A stretch of DNA of 64,000 nucleotides from Sminthopsis crassicaudata (taxonomy: Eukaryota), in assembly GCF_048593235.1 (NCBI RefSeq), contig NC_133623.1:57378066-57442065 (forward strand), read 5' to 3'. The translations under genes were made by a program, and so were the position numbers. The notes beneath the pieces were generated by a model, which was not told the DNA's origin, did no database searches, and saw only the letters and a program-made list of their open reading frames with translations. This document shows, piece by piece, positions 33,492 to 34,152 of the stretch; position 1 is the first letter of the stretch; each line of letters begins with the position of its first letter.

Positions 33492-33600
33492 TTATGACCC
33501 CTTGATGATTTCCAAGATTTGGTCCAGTTCAGTCCAGTCCCGGGAAGCAGACTGCCCCAGAGGAAGAGGCAAAGGCCAAAGCAGAGGGCCAGGGCTCCCT
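33492..33600 (-). pseudogene. SERTAD3: Out-of-frame remnant of the SERTAD3 C-terminus (...SRDWTELDQILEIIKGS*)
   Basis: Hand translation in a frame shifted relative to the CDS gives the conserved SERTAD C-terminal motif ending in TAA at 33494-33492. Confidence 0.85.
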
Positions 33601-34152
33601 TTACACATCCGAGGTGTCGATGTCAGTGAAGAAGTCCTCAGGAACCAGGTCTCCGAGGTACCTGTGGCTCATGAGCTCAAAGCTGCCCGGGATAGGCTCC
33701 TCAGCCCTGAGAGATGGGGAAATTAAGGCCCCAAGAGGGGAAGGTATTTGGGGGCAGTCTCGCAACAGGCCATTGGCAGAGGTAGAGCTACATGTCCGAT
33801 CTAGGGGCTCACGGCAGTCCTGAGTGGCTCTTAAGCCTAAGAGCTCCTCCAGCTCTCTGAGGAAGGACTGAGCAGTTAAGGGGAAAAGCATCTCCAGTCC
33901 AGGTCCCTGGCAGGGGGCTGGGCTCTCCTCCAGGTTCATCTTGTCCCGAATGTGGTTCAGGGTGTTGATGATGAGCACTTGCCGATGGAGGCTAGGTGGG
34001 CCTAGCTGGAATTTGTCCATTGAAAGTTGAAGTAAGGTCTGGCAGAGGTTGCACTGGGAGAAGGGGGCCTGCTCCTGGGACTCCTTTCCAGTCTCCACTT
34101 CTTCTGGATCCCCATGATCACCAGGATGCTTGCGCTTCACACCAACCACCAT
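33601..34152 (-). CDS. SERTAD3: SERTA domain-containing protein 3 (RBT1), 183 aa as assembled, C-terminally truncated
   Basis: MVVGVKRKH start, SERTA domain LLQLSMDKF...LHRQVLIINTL, RYLGD...DFFTDIDTS motif, synteny between SERTAD1 and BLVRB; acceptor ccatcAG 6 nt before the ATG. Confidence 0.9.
   Translation of the reverse strand: MVVGVKRKHPGDHGDPEEVETGKESQEQAPFSQCNLCQTLLQLSMDKFQLGPPSLHRQVLIINTLNHIRDKMNLEESPAPCQGPGLEMLFPLTAQSFLRELEELLGLRATQDCREPLDRTCSSTSANGLLRDCPQIPSPLGALISPSLRAEEPIPGSFELMSHRYLGDLVPEDFFTDIDTSDV

What the first reader, a model, noticed from the sequence alone, without database searches (positions are those of the whole stretch)
33492..33620. SERTAD3 is frameshift-truncated: the conserved C-terminal motif lies intact but out of frame
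The CDS ends ...DIDTSDV*(TAA 33603-33601). In another frame 67 nt later the sequence reads DWTELDQILEIIKGS*, matching human EWNELDHIMEIILGS* (recalled) and paralogous to SERTAD1 ELDYLMDVLVG. Restoring two bases in the TG run (GAT GTG TAA to GAT GTG TGT AAA) gives a continuous 220-aa protein with 23 codons between V and W, the same spacing as human. One dinucleotide slip therefore removes the acidic C-terminal transactivation-type motif while keeping the SERTA domain. The stop is in the last exon, so NMD is not expected and a truncated, possibly dominant-negative cofactor could be made. The undecayed remnant implies a recent mutation, a segregating allele or a consensus error; the assembly is a gapped draft.
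Basis: partly seen in the sequence, partly recalled or inferred. Interest (0 to 1): 0.75.

Follow-up and report, generated by a model that had tools for sequence, protein, structure and literature searches.

The report
Dunnart SERTAD3 lost its C-terminal tail

Summary
The window is Sminthopsis crassicaudata (fat-tailed dunnart, GCA_048593235.1). The SERTA-domain ORF (34152-33601, minus strand, 183 aa) ends at TAA, and the marsupial-invariant motif DWTELDQILEIIKGS lies out of frame 67 nt downstream.

The proposed cause, a dinucleotide slip in the TG run, is wrong. DNA alignment with Sarcophilus, Antechinus and Dromiciops shows two independent derived lesions:
- A GAA-to-TAA nonsense substitution at 33603-33601. 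The old frame keeps matching the orthologues for 21 more codons after it.
- A 20-bp deletion at about 33542/33541, bordered by GGGAC microhomology. This is what shifts the frame.

Contigs from public runs rule out an assembly error for the deletion:
- A DNA run, probably the assembly's own sample, matches the window exactly.
- A spliced RNA contig from a different study also carries the 20-bp deletion. It reads GAA instead of TAA.

So the deletion is shared and most likely older, and the stop varies between animals. The two predicted products are 207 aa and 183 aa. Both keep the SERTA domain and lack the C-terminal motif.

There are signs of relaxed constraint (omega 0.51 against 0.16-0.21, a private 9-bp deletion, changes at invariant residues), but they are not statistically significant. 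This is an ordinary kind of event, a lineage-specific truncation, of moderate interest because the dunnart is a laboratory model.

The parts
33601..34152 (-). SERTAD3 coding region as it stands in the reference: 183 codons plus TAA
   Evidence: ORF list. SERTA Pfam hit. 83% identity to Sarcophilus and Antechinus SERTAD3.
33943..34035 (-). SERTA motif, residues 40-70. It holds H56 and I62 where nine other marsupials have invariant L and T.
   Evidence: Pfam PF06031, 28.5 bits. Invariant columns. Lineage-specific changes.
33601..33603 (-). Premature stop TAA, a nonsense substitution of ancestral GAA (Glu). It varies between animals: the RNA contig of run X2 reads GAA.
   Evidence: GAA in Sarcophilus, Antechinus and Dromiciops. 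X2 reads C on the + strand at 33603; the X1 contig reads as the window does.
33529..33600 (-). Continuation of the ancestral frame after the stop: REPWPSALAFASSSGAVCFPG, then LD and TGA at 33531-33529. It is translated in the GAA allele and gives a 207-aa product.
   Evidence: Translation. The tblastn match runs through the stop in one frame to 33538. Alignment.
33537..33542 (-). Junction of a 20-bp deletion. The breakpoint is ambiguous within the GGGAC microhomology. It removes the codons for QSAAEW and shifts the frame.
   Evidence: A 20-column gap against Sarcophilus, Antechinus and Dromiciops with identical flanks. Both the X1 DNA contig and the X2 RNA contig have 0 gaps against the window.
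33492..33539 (-). Stranded C-terminal motif DWTELDQILEIIKGS plus the ancestral stop TAA at 33494-33492, now out of frame
   Evidence: Translation. Invariant in nine marsupial orthologues. One synonymous-type difference from the three other species.
33865..33866 (-). Junction of a private 9-bp in-frame deletion. Three residues after ..TAQS are missing.
   Evidence: Alignments.
34366..34640 (-). GT-AG intron between a 5' non-coding exon, which ends at about 34641 and extends at least to about 34773, and the coding exon, which starts at 34365
   Evidence: The loose end of the X2 contig at 34367 maps to 34643-34672. The sequence shows AG|gtagga ... ccttgccag|.

Best explanation
The fat-tailed dunnart SERTAD3 gene carries two separate derived lesions in its single coding exon.

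1. A 20-bp microhomology-flanked deletion at about 33542/33541 removes the codons for QSAAEW. It shifts the frame so that translation ends at a new TGA (33531-33529) after two foreign residues.
2. A G-to-T change 60 nt upstream turns the Glu codon after DIDTSDV into TAA.

The deletion is present in both animals examined. The TAA is present in the reference but not in an independent RNA sample. So the deletion most likely came first, and the stop arose later on that background, where it costs little more.

The gene is still transcribed and spliced, and the stops lie in the last exon, so nonsense-mediated decay is not expected. The predicted proteins are 207 aa (GAA allele) or 183 aa (TAA allele), against an ancestral-equivalent 226 aa. 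Both keep the N-terminal KRK motif, the SERTA domain and the acidic DFFTDIDTSD block. Both lack the invariant terminal motif.

[quoted passage not shown] The dunnart protein is therefore most likely a hypomorph or null for co-activation, and for activities that depend on the C-terminal activation domain. The gene may be in early decay, with the intact neighbouring paralogue SERTAD1 possibly buffering the loss.
For: Sequence and frames.

Orthologues:
- Nine marsupial SERTAD3 proteins all have ...DTSDVERE...CFPGQSAAEWDWTELDQILEIIKGS or a close variant in one frame.
- DNA alignment with Sarcophilus (L001), Antechinus (L003) and Dromiciops (L004) shows GAA where the window has TAA, and 20 extra bases where the window has none, with no other indel between them.
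- The tblastn match passes through the stop in one frame up to CFPG.

Reads:
- The X1 DNA contig 33032-33752 is identical to the window, at k-mer depth about 23.
- The X2 contig (1780 nt, from another study, 2018) covers 33000-34367 with no gap, so it has the deletion. It reads GAA at 33603.
- X2 is RNA: its loose end joins 34367 to 34643 across a GT-AG intron.

Species: GCA_048593235.1 is Sminthopsis crassicaudata.

Signs of relaxed constraint:
- The dunnart branch has 10 non-synonymous and 6 synonymous changes (omega about 0.51). Sarcophilus has 9 and 13 (0.21) and Antechinus 7 and 13 (0.16).
- H56 and I62 sit at positions invariant in nine marsupials.
- There is a private 9-bp deletion.

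[quoted passage not shown] SERTAD3 mutants lacking the C-terminal activation domain lose their inhibitory activity against influenza A polymerase (PMC10142937, reviewing Sun et al. 2020).
Against: - Only two samples could be laid. Runs X7 and X10 gave no contigs.
- X1 is probably the assembly's own sample. Both animals may come from the same captive colony. So neither fixation of the deletion nor the frequency of the TAA is known.
- Logan contigs drop minor alleles, so heterozygosity is invisible.
- The omega difference is not significant (Fisher p = 0.14), and omega stays below 1, so constraint on the rest of the protein has not clearly ended.
- The order of events is inferred by parsimony from two haplotypes. 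Recombination or a back-mutation could mimic it.
- Homology between the marsupial tail and the experimentally mapped human activation domain rests on recall and on the paralogue's similar tail. No eutherian sequence was retrieved.
- No protein-level data exist.
Confidence: 0.85

Rival explanations
1. One reading: a single dinucleotide slip in the TG run at the stop both creates the TAA and puts the tail out of frame.
For: Adding two bases there does give one open frame through to the tail.
Against: Three relatives align without any gap across the TG run and the following 69 nt. The stop differs by one substitution, and the only indel is the 20-bp gap downstream. Run X2 has GAA at the same position with no length change.
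Confidence: 0.01
2. Assembly or consensus error: one or both lesions do not exist in the animal.
For: The assembly is a gapped draft. X1 may be the data it was built from, so it is not independent for the TAA.
Against: The deletion is present in a contig from an independent 2018 RNA run and in a DNA contig, both with 0 gaps. The TAA is carried by a DNA contig at k-mer depth about 23 with no other difference over 721 bases.
Confidence: 0.04
3. The gene is already a dead unitary pseudogene. No functional protein is made, and the remaining conservation only reflects how recent the loss is.
For: Two disabling lesions plus a 9-bp deletion. Replacements at residues invariant in other marsupials (H56, I62, and P10R in X2). 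Omega is 2.5-3 times that of the sister lineages.
Against: Omega of 0.51 is still below 1, and the excess is not significant. The SERTA domain still scores above Pfam's cut-off. The transcript is spliced and is abundant enough to be assembled from runs of only 50-90 million letters. The truncation spares more than 80% of the protein.
Confidence: 0.35
4. The tail is recovered at the RNA or translation level, by a cryptic splice or by recoding, so a full-length protein is still made.
For: The tail is intact at the amino-acid level.
Against: The RNA contig is colinear with the genome across 33000-34367 with no joint. The intact tail is unsurprising, because only about 2 neutral changes are expected in 48 nt on this branch and 1 is seen.
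Confidence: 0.02

Closest known systems
SERTAD3 (RBT1) of other marsupials, e.g. Sarcophilus harrisii and Antechinus flavipes
   Same: Orthologous. 83% protein identity over 183 residues. Same single coding exon, the same neighbour (SERTAD1, about 4 kb away in the window), a SERTA motif, a KRK motif and an acidic DIDTSD block.
   Different: The dunnart lacks the in-frame terminal 21 residues (43 in the TAA allele). It also has a private 3-residue deletion, and changes at positions invariant elsewhere.
Engineered C-terminal activation-domain deletion mutants of human SERTAD3 (Sun et al. 2020, as reviewed in PMC10142937)
   Same: A SERTAD3 that keeps its SERTA domain but lacks the C-terminal activation region. 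Those mutants lost the protein's inhibitory activity.
   Different: Those are laboratory constructs of the human protein. The correspondence between their deleted segment and the dunnart's lost residues was not checked with sequence data here.
Polymorphic or unitary pseudogenes: lineage-specific disabling of a conserved single-copy gene
   Same: The lesions are derived and absent from outgroups. One lesion is shared, and a second varies between animals on its background. Omega is raised.
   Different: The gene is still expressed and spliced, most of the ORF is intact, and relaxed constraint is not statistically established.
SERTAD1 (TRIP-Br1), the paralogue at 29707-29042 on the minus strand of the window
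   Same: Same family and the same layout: SERTA region, DDIDTS block and a terminal ELDYLMDVLVG-type motif.
   Different: SERTAD1 is intact, with its tail in frame. It is only about 27% identical to SERTAD3.

Membership tests
SERTA-domain (TRIP-Br/SERTAD) family, SERTAD3 orthologue | SERTA motif (Pfam PF06031) above the curated cut-off | tested here: met
   28.5 bits against a cut-off of 25, residues 40-70
SERTA-domain (TRIP-Br/SERTAD) family, SERTAD3 orthologue | Best matches are annotated SERTAD3 proteins, and the gene lies beside SERTAD1 | tested here: met
   The ten hits are the window's own protein plus nine marsupial SERTAD3 proteins, E down to 1.9e-92. The SERTAD1-like ORF lies at 29707-29042 on the same strand.
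SERTA-domain (TRIP-Br/SERTAD) family, SERTAD3 orthologue | N-terminal KRK motif (nuclear localisation signal and cyclin A-binding region, per PMC2671481) | tested here: met
   MVVGVKRKHP is present. Run X2 carries P10R just after it.
SERTA-domain (TRIP-Br/SERTAD) family, SERTAD3 orthologue | C-terminal homology domain with its terminal motif in frame | tested here: not met
   The motif is out of frame behind a 20-bp deletion, and in the reference also behind a TAA.
Unitary or polymorphic pseudogene | A disabling lesion that is real in reads and derived relative to outgroups | tested here: met
Unitary or polymorphic pseudogene | Relaxed selective constraint on the remaining coding sequence | tested here: inconclusive
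   Omega 0.51 against 0.21 and 0.16, Fisher p = 0.14
Unitary or polymorphic pseudogene | Loss of expression or of protein | tested here: not met
   A spliced RNA contig covers the exon. Protein was not testable.

The most novel reading that the evidence does not exclude
The 20-bp deletion is fixed in Sminthopsis crassicaudata, and perhaps in related dunnarts. That would make this laboratory marsupial a natural mutant lacking the C-terminal activation tail of an interferon-inducible cell-cycle co-regulator. The stop that varies between animals would mark ongoing gene death. The truncated protein, which keeps its SERTA domain, either has lost co-activator and antiviral function or interferes with its partners.
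Probability: 0.35. Interest if true: 0.45.

Novelty: new member of a known kind. Interest (0 to 1): 0.33.

Why it matters
The fat-tailed dunnart is being developed as a laboratory marsupial, and its genome is used as a scaffold for other dasyurid assemblies. Three consequences follow.
- Annotation: two allelic products of 183 and 207 aa should be expected, not a repaired 220-aa model.
- Interpretation of dunnart cell-cycle, interferon and infection experiments, since SERTAD3 lacks a tail that is invariant in nine other marsupials.
- Study of the tail's function: the truncation offers a natural experiment, with a full-length orthologue in Sarcophilus or Antechinus as the control.

It is also a clean small example of stepwise gene decay, with a shared frameshift followed by a nonsense allele that still varies between animals. 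As a class of event it is common, and no paper in the held library links SERTAD3 with dunnarts.

Tried and rejected
So only two animals are genotyped.
- Relatives' DNA: look-ups for the isoform-X2 proteins of Antechinus, Dromiciops and Monodelphis found no record. Cluster members gave the X1 isoforms, which worked for Antechinus and Dromiciops. Wombat, bilby and opossum places came back without DNA.
- Eutherian orthologues: neither a single-sequence nor a profile search returned any. The extra hit P0022 is another marsupial-type sequence.
- Primary papers on the RBT1 and TRIP-Br domains and on the antiviral role (Cho 2000, Hsu 2001, Sun 2020) are not held. Secondary sources were used instead.
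- An alternative placement of the indel was considered: loss of the first copy of the near-repeat GGG[G/A]CAGTCTGC, giving the partial match QSASR-DW. I rejected it because it needs a 17-bp deletion, a 3-bp deletion and several substitutions, against one clean 20-bp gap.
- Earlier scan notes added nothing beyond the same finding.

Full report
**What is there**

On the minus strand an ORF runs 34152..33601 (183 codons, then TAA at 33603-33601) and ends ...DFFTDIDTSDV. In another frame, 33608..33492 ends ...DWTELDQILEIIKGS followed by TAA at 33494-33492. The 183-aa product has a SERTA motif above Pfam's cut-off (28.5 bits against 25, residues 40-70). Apart from itself, its only database relatives are annotated marsupial SERTAD3 proteins, the closest at 83% identity (Sarcophilus harrisii and Antechinus flavipes).

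**Source**

The exact 183-aa protein is recorded on GCA_048593235.1, record CM109187.1. [quoted passage not shown]

**What the lesion really is**

Nine marsupial orthologues share one continuous C-terminus...DTSDVEREPWPS..ASSSGA.C.PGQ....WDWTELDQILEIIKGS, and the last 14-16 residues are invariant.

- After its TAA, the window's original frame continues REPWPSALAFASSSGAVCFPG. That matches Sarcophilus at 19 of 21 positions, and a tblastn match runs straight through the stop in one frame to 33538.
- The window aligns without a gap across GATGTG-TAA-AGGGAG and the next 69 nt, first against Sarcophilus alone and then against Sarcophilus, Antechinus and Dromiciops together. The stop is a single G-to-T substitution of a GAA codon that all three relatives keep.
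- The only indel in the tail is a 20-column gap further on, after ...GTCTGCTTCCC. In Sarcophilus the missing bases are bracketed by GGGAC on both sides, so the junction in the window is ambiguous within 33541-33537.

The '23 codons, same spacing as human' agreement is an accident of arithmetic.

I considered an alternative placement of the gap that uses the near-repeat GGG[G/A]CAGTCTGC. It explains the weak QSASR-DW match. It needs two deletions plus several substitutions, so I rejected it.

**Is it real?**

Twenty runs from seven studies, all labelled as one organism, hold the stretch. Four were laid.

- X1 is a DNA run from 2025, probably the assembly's own sample. It gives a 721-nt contig (33032-33752) identical to the window, at k-mer depth about 23.
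- X2 is from a different study (2018) and holds only 81 million letters. It gives a 1780-nt contig that covers 33000-34367 with no gap, so it carries the 20-bp deletion. At 33603 it reads C on the plus strand, which is GAA rather than TAA.
- X2 is RNA. Its 131-nt loose end beyond 34367 maps to 34643-34672, and the skipped segment 34640..34366 begins GT and ends AG behind a pyrimidine tract.
- X7 and X10 returned nothing, which the tool says is not evidence of absence.

An assembly error is therefore excluded for the deletion and unlikely for the TAA.

**Order of events and products**

Two haplotypes are seen: deletion with GAA, and deletion with TAA. The outgroups have neither lesion. The simplest history is deletion first, then the nonsense change on that background, where it removes only residues that had already lost their partner motif.

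| Form | Length | C-terminal end |
|---|---|---|
| GAA allele | 207 aa | ...CFPG, then two foreign residues (LD), then TGA at 33531-33529 |
| TAA allele | 183 aa | ...DIDTSDV |
| Ancestral equivalent | 226 aa | ...DWTELDQILEIIKGS |

Both stops lie in the last exon, which is the only coding exon, so nonsense-mediated decay is not expected. The spliced contig shows that the message persists.

**State of the rest of the gene**

- With Dromiciops as outgroup, parsimony places 10 non-synonymous and 6 synonymous changes on the dunnart branch (omega about 0.51). Sarcophilus has 9 and 13 (0.21) and Antechinus 7 and 13 (0.16).
- The excess is not significant (Fisher p = 0.14).
- The dunnart has H56 and I62 where nine marsupials have invariant L and T, both inside the SERTA motif.
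- It also has a private 9-bp in-frame deletion at 33866/33865.
- X2 adds P10R at an invariant proline.

These observations point towards relaxed constraint but do not prove it. The stranded tail differs from the other three species at one third-codon position. This fits the roughly two neutral changes expected in 48 nt on this branch, so the tail's intactness cannot date the event.

**Likely consequence (inferred)**

The TRIP-Br/SERTAD family is described as having a carboxy-terminal homology domain. [quoted passage not shown] SERTAD3 is interferon-inducible (PMC10893265). SERTAD3 mutants lacking the C-terminal activation domain lose the protein's inhibitory effect on influenza A polymerase assembly (PMC10142937, reviewing Sun et al. 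2020). Sertad3-null mice are somewhat more susceptible (PMC8005160).

The paralogue SERTAD1 lies at 29707-29042 on the same strand. It is intact and ends with a similar ELDYLMDVLVG-type motif after a DDIDTS block, which supports the tail as a family feature.

I therefore expect the dunnart protein to keep its SERTA-domain contacts and to be weakened or null in functions that depend on the tail. Whether it is a hypomorph, a dominant-negative form or simply on the way to being a pseudogene cannot be decided here.

**Novelty**

No paper in the held library mentions SERTAD3 together with dunnarts. The event is an ordinary kind, a lineage-specific truncation with a second lesion that varies between animals. 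It is worth recording because of the species' use as a model and as a reference genome.

**Limits**

- Only two animals were genotyped. They may come from one colony, and the data are contigs rather than raw reads, so allele frequencies, zygosity and fixation are unknown.
- No assembly gap was filled.

Noticed in passing
window 34123-34124: The RNA contig of run X2 differs from the window at two adjacent bases (A>C and G>C on the + strand). This turns codon 10 from CCT to CGG (P10R), next to the KRK motif, at a proline invariant in nine marsupial orthologues.
   Followed up: partly
window 33865-33866: A private 9-bp in-frame deletion in dunnart SERTAD3. Three residues after ..TAQS that are present in Sarcophilus, Antechinus and Dromiciops are missing.
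   Followed up: partly
window 29042-29707 (minus strand): An intact 221-aa SERTAD1-like ORF about 4 kb from SERTAD3 on the same strand. Its C-terminal ELDYLMDVLVG motif is in frame, so it is a possible functional back-up.
   Followed up: partly
window 36154-36225 (minus strand): A homologue of the N-terminal extension of Sarcophilus SERTAD3 isoform X1 (AVAIQAPTPGG...) is present, with an in-frame stop (AVAI*GLTPGG). This upstream exon is probably non-coding in the dunnart, or the Sarcophilus X1 extension is an annotation artefact.
   Followed up: no
window 34366-34640: The 275-nt 5' intron of SERTAD3 is mostly low-complexity sequence: a T run of about 40, an (AT)n run and AT-rich repeats. The RNA contig also runs at least 281 nt beyond 33000, so the 3' UTR is longer than about 770 nt.
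   Followed up: partly
window 33604-34152 compared with L001 and L003: Fewer synonymous changes fall on the dunnart branch (6) than on the Sarcophilus or Antechinus terminal branches (13 each). This is unexpected if the dunnart branch is the longer one. The counts are small and it may be chance, or an effect of the parsimony method.
   Followed up: no
window 16418-18574: An earlier scan note (s1-184976) proposes an N-terminal extension of periaxin in the same window. It was not examined here.
   Followed up: no
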